Below, one piece after another: positions 13,180-19,113 of a stretch of 64,000 nt of DNA. Each line of letters opens with the position of its first letter. Position 1 is the first letter of the stretch. Under the pieces are notes generated by a model, which did no database searches, was not told the origin of the DNA, and saw only the letters and a program-made list of their open reading frames with translations. The stretch lies in NCBI GenBank assembly GCA_904063045.1, contig CAJFCJ010000027.1, forward strand, positions 124,001-188,000. Reading direction: 5' to 3'. Origin of the DNA: Dimorphilus gyrociliatus. Its lineage: Eukaryota; Animalia; Annelida. The position numbers and the translations under genes were made by a program.

Positions 13180-14291
13180 TTAGGCTATTGCTGCATTTAG
13201 GCTTGTGAACGAGGATAATTCATCTTCAAGGCGGTTGTAGTTCATCCTTCTTGCGAGCCTTTGAAAAGATTCCTCCGATAAGTCATTTATATATATTTAA
13301 TAGTAATTGCGAAATGGAAAATACTTACGCTCTCCTCTTTCTCACGAAACATATTAAACCACCACCCACAGCACCAATAACACCCAACACCATAATGCTA
13401 ATTCCAAACTTTTCACCTCCTGATAATCCACCTCCTCTATCAGTTTTCTTTTTTCTCCCATCATCTGAGGGAGTTGTTAGTACAAGTTCAGGTGTTTCTG
13501 GTGCAGAAGAGGTTGTGACTTCTGCTGTTGATATTCCTCCACCAGTAAGGCTGGTTCTTGTTGTTCCTCCATCAATAATGTTGGATGTTGTTGTTTCTCC
13601 AACAGTAAGGTTGGATCTTGTTGTTCCTCCATCAATAATGTTGGATGTTGTTATTTCTCCAACAGTAAGGCTGGATGTTGTTGTTTCTCCATCAATAATG
13701 TTGGATGTTGTTGTTTCTCCAACAGTAAGGCTGGATCTTGTTGTTTCTCCATCAATAATGTTGGATGTTGTTGTTTCTCCAACGGTAAGGCTGGATCTTG
13801 TTGTTTCTCCATCAATAATGTTGGATGTTGTTGTTTCTCCAACAGTAAGGCTGGATCTTGTTGTTTCTCCATCAATAATGTTGGATGTTGTTGTTTCTCC
13901 AACGGTAAGGTTGGAACTTGTTGTTCCTCCATCAGTAATGCTGGATCTTGTTGAGATTAATTTTTCCTTTGTTGTTTTGTCAGAAACGTCCGGTGACGGG
14001 CTACTATGTACTTTCAGTTTCACACTTATTTTTGAATCAGTAACGGTTGACTGTGAAGTATTTTCCAGTTGGTTCTCTCTACAATTTAAAATTGATTTTG
14101 TTCAATTGTTAAAGAGGAAGAAGTAAAATTGGAGAGAATATACAAATAATGATTACGTTTTAAAATTAGAGGTTAACTGATTAGCTCTACTTTTATAAGC
14201 AATTTGACACGTAAAAATATATAATATACCCTTTGACTGGCAGACAAGTACTAATCGCCAACGACAGTGTTATTAAAGAGTAGATATTCAT
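13180..14291 (-). CDS. Mucin-like type I membrane protein (296 aa) with Ser/Thr tandem repeats and a YxxL tail
   Basis: Exons 14291-14230, 14078-13329 and 13258-13180, all GT-AG, 891 nt in frame. Signal peptide MNIYSLITLSLAISTCLPVKG. Ectodomain repeat SSLTVGETTTSNIIDGETTR. TM FGISIMVLGVIGAVGGGLICFV. Tail RKRRALARRMNYNRLEDELSSFTSLNAAIA. Confidence 0.85.
13545..13950. repeat. Coding minisatellite with a 60-bp unit (two related 30-bp halves), about 6.5 copies
   Basis: Successive 60-nt sequence lines from 13561 to 13940 are nearly identical (ttgtttctccatcaataatgttggatgttgttgtttctccaacagtaaggctggatcttg). They encode the 20-aa Thr/Ser repeat. Confidence 0.95.
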
Positions 14292-14905
14292 TATTGAAGA
14301 TATACAAGTTGATAAATGCTATTATGAAATGACTCTTCTTAAACCAATGGTACATGTATGGAACAAAATTTTGTATTAGTATTGATTTTATTTATACAGA
14401 AATAGCCTATGTATTGATCTGGTCACGCTTTGATTAGTCGTATCGAACAATATTGTCGATAGCCGATAGAGGGCGGGTAAACTAATTCTAGTAAGGAAAA
14501 TAATAGTTTTTATTGTTCATATACCCTTTCAACGAGATAATAGAGGTATGTTAAATGCGTAAGATGGCGCCAAGGGTTGATATTGTCGAGAAAAAAAATT
14601 GTTAACAAAGAGAGCAATATTTCAGGCCAAGGATTTTTATTTATCAAAATGGAATAAAAGTTGGTTTTGCTTTGCAATTAATAAAAGAACGATAGAGAGA
14701 ACCGAAGAGAAAATCAGGGAAAGAGAGAGAAAGAGTGAGTGGGTGAGAACGAGGAGAAAAAAGCAAAACAGAGAAGGAGAAAGAGGGAAAGAGAGAGAGA
14801 GAGAGAGAGAGGTCTATGCAAAAGAAAGTATATCGTTGTATTTCAAGGCTAATTGTTCAAACAAAAACTCAAATTTGAAAAAGTTAAAAGAATTTAGTAA
14901 AGAGT
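14292..14905. promoter_or_regulatory. Probable bidirectional promoter between the mucin-like gene and the GH35-like gene
   Basis: The two ATGs are head-to-head and 614 bp apart. The interval contains AAGATGGCGCC (14561-14571, CTCF/YY1-like) and a GGGCGG box near 14471. Confidence 0.5.
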
Positions 14906-17041
14906 ATGATAAGGTTGAAAAAATTAAGAAATACAATAAGAAATTTATTGGTGTTTGCTGTGATTATTCTATTAATTGAAATGTATATTGATAAAAAAGA
15001 GAATGAGAAGGTAATTCAAAAACCAGTTGTGCCAGCGTGGATAAGAAATAATAAAGCTCCACAAGGGGGCAGAAAATACAAAGCTGGATTCGATAGTGTC
15101 CTTGCAGAACAAGATGTTACGGATAATCCAATTTCTTTATCGACTGTAAGCAAACGAAACGTACGAAAACAATTTAAAAAAATTAGAGAAGGATTAAAAC
15201 GATTCAGAAATAAATTTTACTTAAACGATAGACCATTCCAAATTCTTGGAGGAACTTTTCACTATTTCAGGGTTCATCCTGCCGCTTGGCATGATCGCTT
15301 AATTAAAGTAAAATCTGCCGGTTTAAATACGGTTGTTATTCCTGTACCTTGGAATATTCACGAGGCTACAAGGGGTACTATCAAATTCACTAACATTAAA
15401 TGGGATCTTCTTAAAGTGCTAAACATGACAAAAGAATTGGGTCTATACACCATACTGCAAGTTGGACCCTTTATCAACGCTGGATTAGATTGGGGTGGTC
15501 TTCCTTCCTGGCTCTTACACGAAAACATTAAATTACAAGTTAGGTCTTCGAATGAATACTTCATTAATCCAGTAAGGAATTACTTTGAGCATCTTATTGA
15601 GACATTAGTACCTTTTTGTTATACGACTCACGCTGGTCCAATAATTGGCTTTCAAATAGAAGATGGGTTTGGTCAATATTATCAAGAGGATAAAATGTAT
15701 ATTAACTTTCTTGCCGTACAGTTCCATAATTATCACATAAACGAAATGCTCTTTCTATCCGATTCTGTCGATGTTTTTGAAAGAGATATGATTCCAAATG
15801 TTCATAAATCTGTTCTGTTGAAGAATCCCGACGAGGATGTTACCCAAGCAATCCTAGCCGCTAGGGGTATCCTTAAAGATTCAGAGTACCCTATCCTTAT
15901 TATGAACTTCCCAACGGCTCCTAAACAATGGTGGTGTTATAAGCAAGACGAAGCAAAGCCAGACAAATTTCGAAAGCGTTTAGAGAGGGCCCTTCTCCTA
16001 GAGGTATCCATAGTTCTTCATCCGTTTATCGGGGGGACGAATTTCGGGTTTATGGGCGGAACGTTGAATTCGACAAGTGAAGGAAAGAGAGTTCTAAAGC
16101 ACGAATTGACAAGCTACTTTCCAGACGCTCCAATACTGGAAGGTGGCGTATACGATGAAAAATATTTCATAATTCGTTCCTTACTAAAGGAGATGAAGCT
16201 AACTGCGCCTAATTTACCTCCTCCGCCCCTTCCAAATCCTCCTAGAAAGTATGGCGATGTGAAAATAAATGATTTCGCTGGATACGATCAGTTATTAGAT
16301 ATAACCGACTCTCAGTCAATGCAATATCGAGATGTAAGGCCTATGGAGACTTTAGATATGCATAACGGCGGAGGTCAGAGTTTTGGTTATGTTATTTATA
16401 GAACAGAATTTATAAGAGGTCAAGAAATGTGGTTCATAGGGGCGGTTCACGACTATGGCCTCATTTTGATCAACAACCAAACTTTTACAAAAATCCAATC
16501 AAATGTTACTTACAAAGAAGAACACATAGACTTTTCAAAGGTCAAGTTAATTAAGGAGAATAATTTAGATATATTCTTAGAAAATGCTGGAAGAGTCTAC
16601 GGCGATACAAGATTAAACGATCAAAGAAAAGGATTGCGAGGAAGAATCTTAATCAATTTTGTTCAATTGTTAAACTTCAAGCATGTACCAATTGAATTTT
16701 CCGACAAGTTCTGTAAAAGTTTAAATACAACTTTACAGTGGGAAACTACAAACAAAACAAGCTTTGAGCTGAAAAGTCCTACGTTCTTTAGAGTATTTCT
16801 GGAAATATCAGGAACGCCTCATTACACGTTTATTGATCTGACTAAATGGGGTAAAGGACTAGTTATAGTAAATGGTTATTTGATTGGCAGATATTGGAAT
16901 AAAGAACCCCAAAGAAAGCTATACATTCCATCTGAATTATTGAAAACTGGTAGTAATGTTATCATCATCTTTGAACTTAGCAAAGCATATGAAACTGTTA
17001 TTTTTTCAGAAAAACTTGACACCAAATTTTACAGATTTTAA
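14906..17041 (+). CDS. Intronless GH35 beta-galactosidase-1-like protein (711 aa), type II membrane anchor, predicted catalytically inactive
   Basis: GH35 motifs FYLNDRPFQILGGTFHYFRV, VPWNIHE, GGLPSWL, GGTNFGF, IFLENAGRV, WGKGLVIVNGYLIGRYW and PQRKLYIP. N-terminal anchor LLVFAVIILLIEMYI. Both catalytic Glu positions are substituted (see findings). Confidence 0.9.
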   Translation: MIRLKKLRNTIRNLLVFAVIILLIEMYIDKKENEKVIQKPVVPAWIRNNKAPQGGRKYKAGFDSVLAEQDVTDNPISLSTVSKRNVRKQFKKIREGLKRFRNKFYLNDRPFQILGGTFHYFRVHPAAWHDRLIKVKSAGLNTVVIPVPWNIHEATRGTIKFTNIKWDLLKVLNMTKELGLYTILQVGPFINAGLDWGGLPSWLLHENIKLQVRSSNEYFINPVRNYFEHLIETLVPFCYTTHAGPIIGFQIEDGFGQYYQEDKMYINFLAVQFHNYHINEMLFLSDSVDVFERDMIPNVHKSVLLKNPDEDVTQAILAARGILKDSEYPILIMNFPTAPKQWWCYKQDEAKPDKFRKRLERALLLEVSIVLHPFIGGTNFGFMGGTLNSTSEGKRVLKHELTSYFPDAPILEGGVYDEKYFIIRSLLKEMKLTAPNLPPPPLPNPPRKYGDVKINDFAGYDQLLDITDSQSMQYRDVRPMETLDMHNGGGQSFGYVIYRTEFIRGQEMWFIGAVHDYGLILINNQTFTKIQSNVTYKEEHIDFSKVKLIKENNLDIFLENAGRVYGDTRLNDQRKGLRGRILINFVQLLNFKHVPIEFSDKFCKSLNTTLQWETTNKTSFELKSPTFFRVFLEISGTPHYTFIDLTKWGKGLVIVNGYLIGRYWNKEPQRKLYIPSELLKTGSNVIIIFELSKAYETVIFSEKLDTKFYRF

Positions 17042-17553
17042 TAAAAGCATATTAACAACATTCCACAAATAGGAAAATTGTATTGAGAGCATTTATCTTT
17101 CTCTTCTTCCCCTTCTCATTATCCTCTATTGTTTTTCATTACGTAACTTGTGCAAATTCATCCTAGTACCCTCATATTTTTTTATTTCGTTGTTTTATCT
17201 ACCTTTTTCCCGATCATAATCTTTTGACACATAGATAACATAGATAACCCCTATGGCCCCCACTCCTGCCGACTAAAGGTTATAGAGTCAATGGAAACTG
17301 TCTAAACGCTGCTAGGAATTGATTATACCGATAGAATAAATGCAGATAGAAAGAGAAGAAATGGAGATTTTCTCAAATCCCTTCACTGTATAGATAATCC
17401 AAGATGATTATAACCTATGGTTGCGTGTTTGTTTTTTAAAAAAAAAAAGATTAAAGCAATTTAAATATTTTGTTTTTTTTTATTTTCATGTCAACGTATT
17501 ACATCTAAAGGCCTATTTTAAGCTTATAGTTTTTTCTATATATATATATACTG

Positions 17554-17585
<32 letters not shown>

Positions 17586-17709
17586 AGGAAACGTTTGTCT
17601 CATTACCAACTGTATTACTAATTTTAACATCGCCATCATTATCGGATAATGTTGTTTTTTATGTTTCTTTTAAACAACAGTAAGGAATTATTACTTTCAC
17701 CGATTTGAA

Positions 17710-19113
17710 TTAATATGTTTGGATTGGCCTAATGGTCAGTTCGGAAACCTGGAAAATAATAGTAATTAAGTGTAAAGTGTGCTATAGTATTGATAAGGGA
17801 ATGCTTACCTCAGCGTGAAGAGGAGAAGATAAAGCGTAAATGACGTAGTCAGCGACATCACCGGGCTTAAGAGCCTATTAAATAGGTTAAGTTAGAAGGT
17901 GAATTCATGAATACTTGGAGAGTTTTTAAAAGCTTACTCTTGGTTCCTCGGAATTGTAGATTCCTTCTCCGGTCAAGTCAACTGGGTTCTTCTTGGGAAG
18001 ATTCTCTTCCTTAACACCAACTCTTACAGCGAATTTCTATTTAAAGAGAAAAAGAGAAAATATGACGATAAAATTGCCAAAGTATTTATTTTAAATGAAA
18101 TAAAACCTTAAATTCTTCAAAATCCGGGTCGAATGGCATCATCTTTCCTTTTAAAAAGTCAGTTTTGGTGTTGCCTGGACTGATGTGCTATTAGTTGAAA
18201 AGAAATACGTATAATATGTATAAGAGAGAGAAAGAGAGAGATAGAATGATCTTATAAATTGGCAACACTTACGGTCATTTTGATATGACTCTTAAGAGAT
18301 TTCAACTCCATACTGAAGCCTTCAGTCATTGATCTCAGACCATATTTTGTGGCGGACCAAAAGTGATGTGAAGGGTAAATAGAAATGTTATGGCTTGATG
18401 TACTAGAGATAGGAAAAGGAAATTCAGTTGGGGATTTGTATTAAATAGCTTAAATCGCTAGGGTTTAGGTAACTTTTACTTACGCTCCAATGTTGATAAT
18501 GTGTCCAGTATCGTAATCCTTTTCCATCATAAGGTTTATAGCTTTTTGGCAAGTGATTGCAGGAGCAACAACATTTACCTGATTGGAGTTAAAAAGTAGG
18601 ATAGTTATTTAATGCATTAACAAAATGTTTTATGCTAAGTGCTTTTTACCGCGAGCATGTTTCTCCAATCCTTGGTTTCGCCATCCATAATACTGGCAGA
18701 TCCAGAAACGCTTGCGTTATTTACGACGACATGAACTAATCCGTGCTTCTTTTCAATTTCAGTGAAAACATCCAAAATTTGTGATTTTACTCTTAAATCG
18801 CATTTTTTAGCAATCAACTGTCCTTTTTGGCCTTTAAGTTGATCAGAGAGAGCCTGAAATAACAAAACGTCTAATTCCGTATCTATGTCACCGTTATATA
18901 CATTAAATACATGTTGATTTTTGTGTTTTTGCCTATTCAACAAAAACCTATTTACTCAATAGAAAACATATTAATACTTACTTGAATTAATTCAACAGAT
19001 CTAGCAATTCCGTAAACGATCATTCCAGATTTTACTAATTCTATACAGATGGCAGCTCCAATTCCCTTGGATGCTCCGGTTACGAGGGCAACTTTTCCTT
19101 CCCACTTTTCCAT
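17710..19113 (-). CDS. DHRS11-like short-chain dehydrogenase/reductase (281 aa) with WxxxK in place of YxxxK
   Basis: Eight GT-AG exons in frame (846 nt): 19113-18982, 18853-18650, 18578-18484, 18402-18273, 18187-18107, 18036-17938, 17874-17809, 17748-17710. Motifs are [47 protein letters not shown] and [17 protein letters not shown]...ELTIRP, the last being a DHRS11-type C-terminus. Confidence 0.9.

What the first reader, a model, noticed from the sequence alone, without database searches (positions are those of the whole stretch)
14906..17041. Intact but catalytically dead, membrane-anchored GH35 'galactosidase', a candidate lectin or scaffold pseudoenzyme
Seen in sequence: the 711-aa frame is uninterrupted and the fold motifs are kept, yet the active site is systematically rewritten. 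The acid/base motif QVENEYG reads QIEDGFG (Glu to Gly, codon 15665-15667). The nucleophile motif xxMEF/YxxGW reads LIMNFPTAP (Glu to Asn, codon 15905-15907). The substrate-binding ICAEW reads INAGL, TYVPWN reads IPVPWN, NLYMF reads VLHPF, and TSYDYDAP reads TSYFPDAP. Established: in human GLB1 these positions are E188, E268, C127/E129, Y83, Y306 and Y333. Inference: the gene is a maintained pseudoenzyme with a type II anchor, possibly a Golgi or surface glycan-binding or scaffolding protein, rather than a decaying pseudogene.
Basis: partly seen in the sequence, partly recalled or inferred. Interest (0 to 1): 0.75.

Follow-up and report, generated by a model that had tools for sequence, protein, structure and literature searches.

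The report
Dead membrane-anchored GH35 galactosidase relative
A tiny marine worm keeps and transcribes a gene that looks like a sugar-cutting enzyme (beta-galactosidase) but has lost both cutting residues and nearly every sugar-gripping residue. It is a conserved 'pseudoenzyme', and it probably works by binding something other than galactose.

Summary
Window 14906-17041(+) is an uninterrupted 711-aa ORF from Dimorphilus gyrociliatus, a miniature annelid. It has all three GH35 domains and a confident GH35 fold.

- **Catalytic residues lost:** the acid/base Glu is Gly254 and the nucleophile Glu is Asn334. Y83, C127, E129, W130, Y270, W273, Y306 and Y333 (human GLB1 numbering) are also replaced, mostly by Pro, Gly, Ala, Leu or Phe.
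- **Not a decaying pseudogene:** a 76%-identical copy in a second species shares the losses, with dN about 0.15, saturated dS and omega at most about 0.17. That species also carries a second paralogue, about 50% identical and with introns, that lacks both glutamates.
- **Transcribed:** contigs of a run that shows spliced neighbour transcripts cover the ORF.
- **Origin:** the dead clade sits on a long stem inside an annelid-wide family of single-exon GH35 genes with an N-terminal signal anchor. The Owenia member keeps the active site.
- **Pattern of change:** of 116 sites conserved in active relatives, 79 are kept. Of the 28 changed in all dead members, 24 lie in the TIM barrel, in the strand-end motifs that form the catalytic face.

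A galactose lectin using the old pocket is unlikely. Interest is moderate.

The parts
14906..17041 (+). Single-exon CDS of the 711-aa GH35 pseudoenzyme (stop codon included)
   Evidence: ORF list. Pfam GH35 + BetaGal_ABD_1 + BetaGal_gal-bd. The public annotation calls the same single-exon gene.
14906..15016 (+). Basic tail (MIRLKKLRNTIR) plus hydrophobic segment NLLVFAVIILLIEMYI: a likely type II signal anchor (residues 1-37, modelled as one helix)
   Evidence: Kyte-Doolittle best 19-mer scores 2.06 after a net +4 tail. AF2 models helix 2-37 at pLDDT 80-94. The nearest relatives carry an internal N-terminal hydrophobic segment too. Topology is inferred.
15017..15187 (+). Disordered stem, residues about 38-94, the fastest-evolving part
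   Evidence: pLDDT is below 50 for residues 37-90. dN is 0.32 for about the first 100 residues (anchor plus stem), against 0.14-0.15 elsewhere.
15188..16195 (+). GH35 TIM-barrel domain (residues about 95-430) with the rewritten catalytic face
   Evidence: Pfam match 104-429. Alignments to solved structures. 24 of the 28 family-conserved sites changed in all dead members lie here.
15665..15667 (+). Codon GGG = Gly254 at the acid/base Glu position (human E188)
   Evidence: The column is S in P0002 and G in P0125.
15905..15907 (+). Codon AAC = Asn334 at the nucleophile Glu position (human E268)
   Evidence: The column is N in P0002 and S in P0125.
16373..17038 (+). Two C-terminal beta domains (BetaGal_ABD_1, residues 490-596; BetaGal_gal-bd, residues 625-684), with family-conserved sites almost all kept
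   Evidence: Pfam. AF2 beta strands at pLDDT mostly 85-98. Only 4 conserved sites changed here.
17040..17045 (+). AATAAA polyadenylation-type hexamer overlapping the stop codon
   Evidence: Sequence. Transcript contig cover ends at 16944, and depth falls from about 230 to 3-30 beyond it. Function is inferred.
14651..14905 (+). Transcribed 5' leader, which includes a GA-rich repeat at 14770-14819
   Evidence: RNA-like contigs lie at 14651-14769 and 14820-15834. There is no cover at 14379-14575.

Best explanation
This is a conserved, transcribed, non-catalytic descendant of a GH35 beta-galactosidase, that is, a pseudoenzyme.

**Predicted protein (inferred from sequence).** It is a type II membrane glycoprotein with four parts:
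- a short basic cytosolic tail;
- one signal-anchor helix;
- a disordered stem of about 55 residues;
- a lumenal or extracellular three-domain GH35 body.

**History.**
- It descends from an annelid-wide family of single-exon, N-terminally anchored GH35 genes. The Owenia member of that family keeps a normal active site.
- On the branch leading to Dimorphilus and its relative, the whole catalytic face of the TIM barrel was replaced. Both glutamates and the galactose-contacting Tyr, Glu, Cys, Trp and Asn residues became Pro, Gly, Ala, Leu, Val or Phe.
- The gene then duplicated, and both copies have been held under purifying selection since.

**How it most likely works (inferred).** It cannot hydrolyse galactosides by the retaining GH-A mechanism. 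It is unlikely to bind galactose in the old -1 subsite. It most likely acts through binding, as a scaffold, chaperone or partner subunit in the secretory pathway or at the cell surface. The binding surface would be the preserved fold and beta domains, possibly also the new hydrophobic, proline-rich former pocket.

**Shown here:** loss of the residues, conservation, selection, transcription and fold. **Inferred:** topology, lack of activity and the binding role.
For: - **Residue losses:** mapped on solved GH35 structures and codons verified.
- **Family variation:** the acid/base column is E in 57 of 60 relatives. The nucleophile column is E in 49 of 60.
- **Shared loss:** P0002 (76% identical) has QIENSFG and LIMNF. 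P0125 (about 50% identical) has QIEHGFG and LIMSF.
- **Selection against P0002:** dN 0.146-0.164 and dS 0.92-2.5. Differences by codon position are 149/83/321. The TIM barrel has the lowest dN, 0.136.
- **Tree:** the dead clade has SH-aLRT 100, a stem of 1.49 substitutions per site and tips of 0.15 and 0.09. It is nested (support 91) among the anchored annelid GH35 genes.
- **Conserved-site census:** 116 sites are at least 85% conserved in 74 active relatives. Of these, 79 are kept in all dead members and 28 are changed in all of them. 24 of the 28 lie in the TIM barrel, clustered in the strand-end motifs that carry the active-site residues.
- **Fold:** AF2 pLDDT 87 and pTM 0.85. Foldseek target-normalised TM-scores are 0.87-0.93 to the three-domain GH35 beta-galactosidases, human GLB1 included.
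- **Transcription:** run X1 shows six spliced introns with CT..AC ends in the minus-strand neighbour, so it behaves as RNA. Its contigs cover 14651-16944 at depth 134-223 with no mismatches. There is no cover at 14379-14575.
- **Anchor:**. All 6 N-X-S/T sequons of P0001 are kept in P0002.
- **Relatives:** Owenia fusiformis P0128 has active residues and a single exon. Paralvinella palmiformis P0127 has a single exon.
Against: - No enzyme or binding assay exists, so lack of activity is inferred from sequence.
- dS is saturated, so omega is only an upper-bound estimate from one pair.
- Transcription rests on one run of unrecorded type, kept as contigs. Strand, ends and level are not shown.
- The former pocket is no better conserved among the three dead members than the protein as a whole. 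About 8 of 15 pocket columns are identical, against about 50% overall. This gives no positive sign that the pocket is the working surface.
- No binding partner is known.
- The N-terminal segment could be a long uncleaved or cleaved signal peptide. No predictor was available.
- The identity of the second species is unknown.
Confidence: 0.7

Rival explanations
1. Glycan-binding pseudoenzyme (lectin). The dead barrel still recognises galactose-terminated glycans, as GH18 chitinase-like lectins still bind chitooligosaccharides. The protein would then act as a membrane-bound glycan receptor or cargo lectin.
For: - This is the commonest fate described for pseudoglycosidases (review PMC7828330).
- The fold and the C-terminal 'galactose-binding-like' jelly roll are preserved.
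- The predicted lumenal or extracellular position suits glycan contact.
Against: - Chitinase-like lectins keep their sugar-binding aromatic and polar residues. Here Y83, E129, W130, Y270, W273, Y306 and Y333 are all replaced by Pro, Gly, Leu, Ala, His or Asn. Further conserved polar residues of the catalytic face (R185, N304, N370, T284) became Gln, Leu, Val and Leu.
- Several former contact columns differ among the three dead members (G/S/G, N/N/S, P/F/A, H/N/H).
- A sugar site elsewhere on the protein is not excluded.
Confidence: 0.12
2. Regulatory partner of an active GH35 paralogue. The dead protein would pair with an anchored, active GH35 enzyme and control its stability, location or activity.
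For: - Active anchored relatives exist in other annelids (Owenia P0128).
- Mouse GLB1 works inside an oligomeric complex with cathepsin A (PDB 7kdv; PMC8115914).
- The core and beta domains, where oligomer contacts could lie, are the best-kept parts.
Against: - No active GH35 gene of Dimorphilus was identified here.
- This is a special case of the 'binding or scaffold' reading, not truly exclusive of it.
Confidence: 0.1
3. Still an enzyme with new chemistry. Other acidic residues (E252, kept in all GH35; D253 in this species; D294, new in all three dead members) or a substrate-assisted route would supply catalysis on a new substrate.
For: - E252 is retained.
- Position 294 changed from Gly to Asp in all three dead members.
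- From established knowledge, some GH-A relatives work with one carboxylate missing. GH1 myrosinases, for example, lack the acid/base.
Against: - Both catalytic positions are lost, together with the sugar-binding shell.
- D253 is not conserved (N in P0002, H in P0125).
- Asn or Ser at the nucleophile position, with Gly or Ser at the acid/base position, leaves no pair of carboxylates at the strand-4 and strand-7 ends that define clan GH-A catalysis.
- The placement of D294 relative to the pocket was not testable.
Confidence: 0.05
4. A recently disabled gene on its way to decay, or an annotation or assembly artefact.
For: It is a single-exon gene in an intron-rich neighbourhood. The neighbouring SDR gene has six 60-85 nt introns. 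At first sight this suggests a processed copy.
Against: - The 2.1-kb ORF is intact in two species, with dN/dS well below 1.
- A second dead paralogue has canonical GT-AG introns and open exons.
- The gene is transcribed.
- The single-exon state is shared with active annelid relatives, so it is ancestral and not a recent retrocopy.
- RNA contigs match the assembly without mismatches.
Confidence: 0.03

Closest known systems
GH35 beta-galactosidases (human/mouse GLB1, Bacillus circulans BgaC, Streptococcus pneumoniae BgaC)
   Same: The same three-domain architecture and fold. Pfam matches PF01301, PF21317 and PF21467. Foldseek target-normalised TM-scores are 0.87-0.93. 79 of 116 family-conserved sites are kept.
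   Different: Both catalytic glutamates and almost all galactose-contacting residues are replaced. It has an N-terminal signal anchor plus stem instead of a cleaved signal peptide or a cytosolic form. The gene is a single exon.
Annelid single-exon, N-terminally anchored GH35 genes (Owenia fusiformis P0128; P0003; P0005)
   Same: These are the nearest relatives in the tree (support 91). They share the N-terminal hydrophobic anchor, the stem and the size (690-705 aa). P0003 and P0128 are single-exon in their genome assemblies; P0005's gene structure was not checked.
   Different: They keep Y83, C127, E129, W130, N187, E188, E268, W273, Y306 and Y333, so they look catalytically competent. The Dimorphilus clade is separated from them by a stem of 1.49 substitutions per site.
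67-kDa elastin-binding protein (enzymatically inactive spliced form of GLB1)
   Same: A GH35-derived protein that does not hydrolyse. It works by binding, as a companion of tropoelastin and a receptor subunit (PMC2200028).
   Different: It is made by alternative splicing of the active gene and is not a separate gene. It is not type II anchored. It is reported to keep a galactolectin site, whereas here the sugar site is dismantled.
Klotho proteins (GH1-like pseudoglycosidases, clan GH-A)
   Same: Membrane-anchored TIM-barrel glycosidase relatives that lack catalytic glutamates. The former pocket binds a peptide 'sugar-mimicking motif' instead of a sugar (as summarised in PMC7828330). This is the best functional analogy for a rewritten pocket.
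   Different: A different family (GH1, not GH35) and tandem domains. Klotho is type I anchored (from established knowledge), where this protein is predicted type II. Its partners (FGFs and FGFRs) are known. No partner is known here.
Mammalian GLB1L2, and Paralvinella palmiformis P0127
   Same: Other animal GH35 proteins that lack the nucleophile Glu. The column is L or V in proteins named GLB1L2 from several mammals and G in P0127. These losses are independent on the tree.
   Different: They keep the acid/base NEY motif and more of the pocket. Only the Dimorphilus clade has lost both glutamates. GLB1L2 has an N-terminal signal-like segment and no long stem.
GH18 chitinase-like lectins (YKL-39/40) and heparanase-2 (GH79)
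   Same: Gene-encoded pseudoglycosidases maintained by selection (PMC7828330, PMC12406646).
   Different: They retain ligand-binding residues and bind the ancestral glycan. Here the binding shell itself is replaced.

Membership tests
Glycoside hydrolase family 35 (sequence/fold family) | Significant match to the GH35 catalytic-domain profile over its full length | tested here: met
   PF01301 E=1.5e-66, profile positions 2-318 of 319.
Glycoside hydrolase family 35 (sequence/fold family) | TIM barrel followed by two beta domains, superposable on solved GH35 structures | tested here: met
   AF2 pLDDT 87 and pTM 0.85. Foldseek E of 1e-46 to 1e-52 and target TM 0.87-0.93 to 4mad, 8fa5, 7kdv and 3thc.
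Active retaining GH35 beta-galactosidase (clan GH-A mechanism) | Acid/base Glu in the Q-x-E-N-E-[FY] motif (human E188) | tested here: not met
   Gly254 (QIEDGFG); the column is S and G in the two relatives.
Active retaining GH35 beta-galactosidase (clan GH-A mechanism) | Nucleophile Glu at the end of strand 7 (human E268) | tested here: not met
   Asn334 (LIMNF); the column is N and S in the two relatives.
Active retaining GH35 beta-galactosidase (clan GH-A mechanism) | Galactose-contacting shell (human Y83, E129, N187, Y270, W273, Y306, Y333) | tested here: not met
   The residues here are P146, G193, D253, P336, P339, H372 and P406. The roles of the human residues come from established knowledge; the structure paper could not be fetched.
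Active retaining GH35 beta-galactosidase (clan GH-A mechanism) | Hydrolysis of beta-galactosides | not testable with these tools
   Needs recombinant protein and an assay.
Pseudoenzyme (maintained inactive homologue of an enzyme) | Homologous to an enzyme family but lacking its essential catalytic residues | tested here: met
Pseudoenzyme (maintained inactive homologue of an enzyme) | Kept by purifying selection after the loss | tested here: met
   dN 0.15-0.16 against dS 0.9-2.5 for the pair P0001 and P0002. The loss is shared by three genes in two species.
Pseudoenzyme (maintained inactive homologue of an enzyme) | Expressed | tested here: met
   At the RNA level only. Contigs of a run with spliced neighbour transcripts cover 14651-16944. 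Protein was not tested.
Pseudoglycosidase lectin (for example GH18 chitinase-like proteins) | Retention of the ancestral sugar-binding residues | tested here: not met
   Aromatic and polar contacts are replaced by Pro, Gly, Ala, Leu, Val or Phe.
Pseudoglycosidase lectin (for example GH18 chitinase-like proteins) | Measured glycan binding | not testable with these tools
   Needs a glycan array or ITC.
Type II single-pass membrane protein (Golgi-enzyme-like layout) | Short basic N-terminal tail, one uncleaved hydrophobic helix, stem, globular C-terminal domain | tested here: inconclusive
   The layout is present in the sequence and the model, and relatives have internal N-terminal anchors. No signal-peptide or topology predictor was available, and there is no experiment.
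Processed pseudogene or recent retrocopy | Intronless copy of an intron-bearing parent, evolving neutrally | tested here: not met
   dN/dS is well below 1. The single-exon state is shared with active annelid relatives.

The most novel reading that the evidence does not exclude
The rewritten former active site, now lined with prolines and hydrophobic residues and largely fixed across paralogues, is a new binding site for a peptide or a lipid-like ligand. The protein would then be a Klotho-like membrane adaptor or co-receptor derived from GH35, the first of its kind for this family. With the nucleophile-less mammalian GLB1L2 and Paralvinella P0127, it would show that animal GH35 genes have repeatedly been turned into non-enzymes.
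Probability: 0.15. Interest if true: 0.7.

Novelty: new variant of a known kind. Interest (0 to 1): 0.45.

Why it matters
Pseudoglycosidases are known from GH18, GH1, GH79 and GH33. For GH35, the only non-enzymatic form I could find in the held literature is a splice product of GLB1 (the elastin-binding protein). A full-text search for GH35 together with 'pseudoenzyme' found no paper.

This case is unusually clean, for four reasons:
- Both glutamates and the whole sugar shell are gone.
- The fold is intact.
- Two paralogues are kept.
- The active ancestor type is still present in other annelids.

That makes it a good natural experiment on what a glycosidase scaffold can be reused for once sugar binding is given up.

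The side observation may matter more widely. Proteins named GLB1L2 in several mammals lack the nucleophile, so their annotation as 'beta-galactosidase-1-like' should not be read as an enzyme activity.

The scope is limited. The clade was seen in only two species of tiny worms, and no function is known.

Tried and rejected
- **Recent retrocopy idea:** rejected. The nearest active relatives (P0003 on L003, Owenia P0128, Paralvinella P0127) are also single-exon.
- **P0002 as a paralogue from the same animal:** judged unlikely. The exact P0001 protein is on record only in the Dimorphilus assembly. The contigs of the other samples have lower G+C (0.27-0.29, against about 0.32-0.34 in the window). 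The species behind SRR23372228 and SRR23372229 could not be named.
- **Orthologue of the intron-bearing paralogue in Dimorphilus:** a word search with P0125 found none. Length limits and gene calling make this blank uninformative.
- **RNA runs:** only one run was offered, of unrecorded type and kept as contigs. It behaves as RNA but cannot give strand, ends or level. One low-depth contig shows odd non-canonical joints (13514 to 15038, 15099 to 15221, 15280 to 15735, with inserted letters). I treat it as a chimera or as foreign, and it is unexplained.
- **Codon models:** YN00 failed on saturation. No multi-species codon model was possible with two full-length sequences.
- **Pocket geometry:** model coordinates are not exposed to scripts. 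Pocket volume and the position of D294 or E252 could not be measured.
- **GLB1 structure paper:** the human GLB1 structure paper could not be fetched by DOI or by a guessed PMC id. The roles of the human residues therefore rest on established knowledge plus the alignments.
- **Literature:** 'GH35' with 'pseudoenzyme' and 'GLB1L2' with 'nucleophile' each gave no paper.
- **Exon handling:** the intron-bearing paralogue on L006 was compared exon by exon (tblastn inside a script). I made no joined model and searched none.
Full report
**What is there.** Window 14906-17041(+) is one uninterrupted ORF of 711 codons. An in-frame stop lies 21 nt upstream of the ATG. The stop is TAA at 17039-17041, overlapped by an AATAAA hexamer at 17040-17045. 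Pfam finds the three GH35 modules: Glyco_hydro_35 (residues 104-429, E=1.5e-66), BetaGal_ABD_1 (490-596) and BetaGal_gal-bd (625-684). The exact protein is on record in one place, contig CAJFCJ010000027.1 of assembly GCA_904063045.1, where the public annotation also calls it as a single-exon gene. A genome paper lists that assembly as Dimorphilus gyrociliatus, a miniature annelid (PMC10212961).

The chain index of 3wez equals native numbering plus one, as the I51T entry shows.

| Human GLB1 residue | Residue here | Motif here |
|---|---|---|
| Y83 | P146 | IPVPWN |
| C127, E129, W130 | N191, G193, L194 | INAGL |
| N187, E188 (acid/base) | D253, G254 | QIEDGFG |
| E268 (nucleophile), Y270, W273 | N334, P336, P339 | LIMNFPTAP |
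| Y306, M307 | H372, P373 | VLHPF |
| D332, Y333 | F405, P406 | TSYFPDAP |

In 60 aligned relatives the acid/base column is Glu in 57 and the nucleophile column is Glu in 49.

**It is maintained, not decaying.**
- The word search found one close relative, P0002 (714 aa, 76% identical). It comes from contigs of two sequencing runs (loci L001 and L002). It has QIENSFG and LIMNF, so it too lacks both glutamates.
- Codon comparison gives dN 0.146-0.164 and dS 0.92-2.5 (saturated). Differences by codon position are 149/83/321. The TIM barrel has the lowest dN, 0.136. Omega is therefore at most about 0.17.
- The exhaustive profile search added P0125, a 358-aa exon product about 50% identical, with QIEHGFG and LIMSF.
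- P0125 comes from the same two runs as P0002. Its locus L006 carries the rest of the gene in further exons. These are separated by canonical GT-AG introns of about 300 and 200 nt, and all visible exons are open. I compared these exons one by one and built no joined model.
- Those runs are therefore DNA, and P0002 is intronless in DNA too.
- The exact P0001 protein is not on record in those runs, and their contigs have lower G+C. I take them to be a second, related species that holds two dead paralogues. I could not name that species.
This fits a second paralogue here as well, but I could not read that DNA.

**It is transcribed.**
- The only run offered (X1, type not on record, kept as contigs) shows a contig of the minus-strand neighbour gene with six joints. 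Each skips 60-85 nt and has CT..AC ends, which are GT..AG introns on the minus strand. The run therefore behaves as RNA.
- Its contigs cover 14651-14769, 14820-15834 and 15805-16944 without a mismatch, at depth 134-223.
- Nothing lies on 14379-14575. Depth falls to 3-30 beyond 16944.
- Contigs cannot give strand, ends or level.

**Fold and layout.**
- AlphaFold2 with a 60-sequence alignment gives mean pLDDT 87 and pTM 0.85.
- The model has a helix over residues 2-37, a disordered stretch at 37-90 and a confident globular body from about residue 98.
- Foldseek places it on the three-domain GH35 beta-galactosidases with target-normalised TM-scores of 0.87-0.93. These include B. circulans BgaC, Xanthomonas GH35, and mouse and human GLB1.
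- The N-terminus is a net +4 tail followed by NLLVFAVIILLIEMYI. A short tail, an anchor, a stem and then a globular domain is the usual plan of type II secretory-pathway enzymes. This is inference, since no topology predictor was available.
- The nearest relatives carry hydrophobic segments starting at residues 12-27, too far in for a cleaved signal peptide. This supports an ancestral signal anchor.
- All six N-X-S/T sequons of P0001 are kept in P0002. That is weak support for a lumenal or extracellular body.

**Where it came from.**
- In a maximum-likelihood tree the three dead sequences form one group (SH-aLRT 100). The stem is 1.49 substitutions per site, against a median end branch of 0.72. 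The tips for P0001 and P0002 are short, at 0.15 and 0.09.
- The group is nested (support 91) among anchored proteins of 690-765 aa.
- One of these, P0128, is from Owenia fusiformis. It is a single exon and keeps all active-site residues.
- Another, P0127, is from Paralvinella palmiformis. It is also a single exon but has Gly at the nucleophile (species names from PMC13381798).
- P0003 is likewise an uninterrupted ORF on its genomic contig.
- The single-exon state and the anchor are therefore old features of an annelid family, not signs of a recent retrocopy.

**What was changed and what was kept.**
- 116 sites are at least 85% conserved in 74 relatives that keep both catalytic glutamates. Of these, 79 are kept in all dead members and 28 are changed in all of them.
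- 24 of the 28 lie in the TIM barrel. They cluster at positions 145-146, 185-194, 254, 284, 304, 334-340, 370-373 and 405-406.
- The new residues are mostly Pro, Gly, Ala, Leu, Val or Phe. Conserved polar residues (R185, T284, N304, N370) became Gln, Leu, Leu and Val.
- The beta domains lost only four conserved sites.
- Among the three dead members, about 8 of 15 former pocket columns are identical, against about 50% identity overall. The two former catalytic columns vary (G/S/G and N/N/S). The pocket was dismantled and made hydrophobic, but it is not visibly more constrained than the rest of the protein.

**How it most likely works.**
- Clan GH-A retaining hydrolysis needs the two carboxylates at the ends of strands 4 and 7 (established knowledge). 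Both are gone in three genes, and no substitute acid is conserved: D253 is N or H in the others. Hydrolysis is therefore very unlikely.
- Lectin-type pseudoglycosidases keep their sugar-binding shell (PMC7828330). This protein does not, so galactose binding in the old subsite is unlikely.
- What selection preserves is the fold, the beta domains and a new hydrophobic face. The most likely role is binding in the secretory pathway or at the cell surface, as a scaffold, chaperone or partner subunit.
- Two precedents exist. The inactive spliced GLB1 form acts as an elastin companion (PMC2200028). The GH1-derived Klotho proteins use a dead pocket to bind peptides (PMC7828330).
- I put the core claim (maintained, expressed, non-catalytic) at about 0.85. 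I put the whole statement, including the binding role and topology, at 0.7.

**Known or new.**
- Pseudoglycosidases are a known kind, and the GH35 fold is known.
- In the held literature I found no paper joining GH35 with 'pseudoenzyme', and none joining GLB1L2 with 'nucleophile'.
- A paper on mouse Glb1-like genes discusses only the acid/base motif (PMC3103743).
- I rate this a new variant of a known kind: a gene-encoded GH35 pseudoenzyme clade with both glutamates and the sugar shell lost.
- It was seen in two species only and its function is unknown, so interest is moderate.

[quoted passage not shown] The mammals are Tamandua, Erinaceus, Dasypus, Choloepus, Hippopotamus, Tupaia and Meriones. 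A direct alignment of the Tamandua protein to B. circulans BgaC confirms this. On the tree, this loss, those in Paralvinella P0127 and metagenomic P0152, and the Dimorphilus clade lie at four separate places.

Noticed in passing
P0007, P0011, P0012, P0013, P0016, P0017, P0018, P0147, P0151 (proteins from searches, not in the window): [quoted passage not shown] All nine have Leu or Val at the nucleophile Glu column. Those checked (P0007, P0147, P0151) also have H, G, D, L, T and S at the Y83, C127, E129, W130, Y270 and W273 columns. All keep the acid/base NEY motif. They may be nucleophile-less pseudoenzymes. The alignment to 4mad confirms E to L in the Tamandua protein.
   Followed up: partly
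L008:1001-3118 (Paralvinella palmiformis, P0127); L009:689-2923 and L010:162-2396 (metagenome contigs, P0152): Two further anchored GH35 proteins have lost the nucleophile independently (Gly and Leu) but keep the acid/base Glu. P0127 is single-exon.
   Followed up: partly
L006:128-2377 and L007 (same gene): A second dead GH35 paralogue in the other species, about 50% identical to the window protein. Its canonical GT-AG introns lie at about 1196-1499 and 1872-2068. The contig starts inside the gene, so its N-terminus and any anchor are unseen.
   Followed up: partly
window 13325-14291 (-): The upstream neighbour is a Thr/Ser-rich tandem-repeat protein (repeat unit like TTSNIIDGETTRSSLTVGE) with a C-terminal hydrophobic segment and a basic tail, so it looks mucin-like. 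RNA-like contigs lie on it at high word depth, but the repeats inflate that figure.
   Followed up: no
window 17710-19113 (-): The downstream neighbour is a short-chain dehydrogenase-like gene (Pfam adh_short in the public call). It has six introns of 60-85 nt and the highest contig depth in the stretch.
   Followed up: no
window 13514-15804: One low-depth contig of run X1 joins 13514 to 15038, 15099 to 15221 and 15280 to 15735. The joints have non-canonical ends and inserted letters, and five mismatches lie at 15769-15804. It looks like a chimera or a transcript from a related locus. Unexplained.
   Followed up: no
window 14740-14819 and 17524-17591: Simple GA-rich and TA-rich repeats flank the gene, in the 5' leader and downstream of the 3' end. 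The read tool skipped them as repeats.
   Followed up: no
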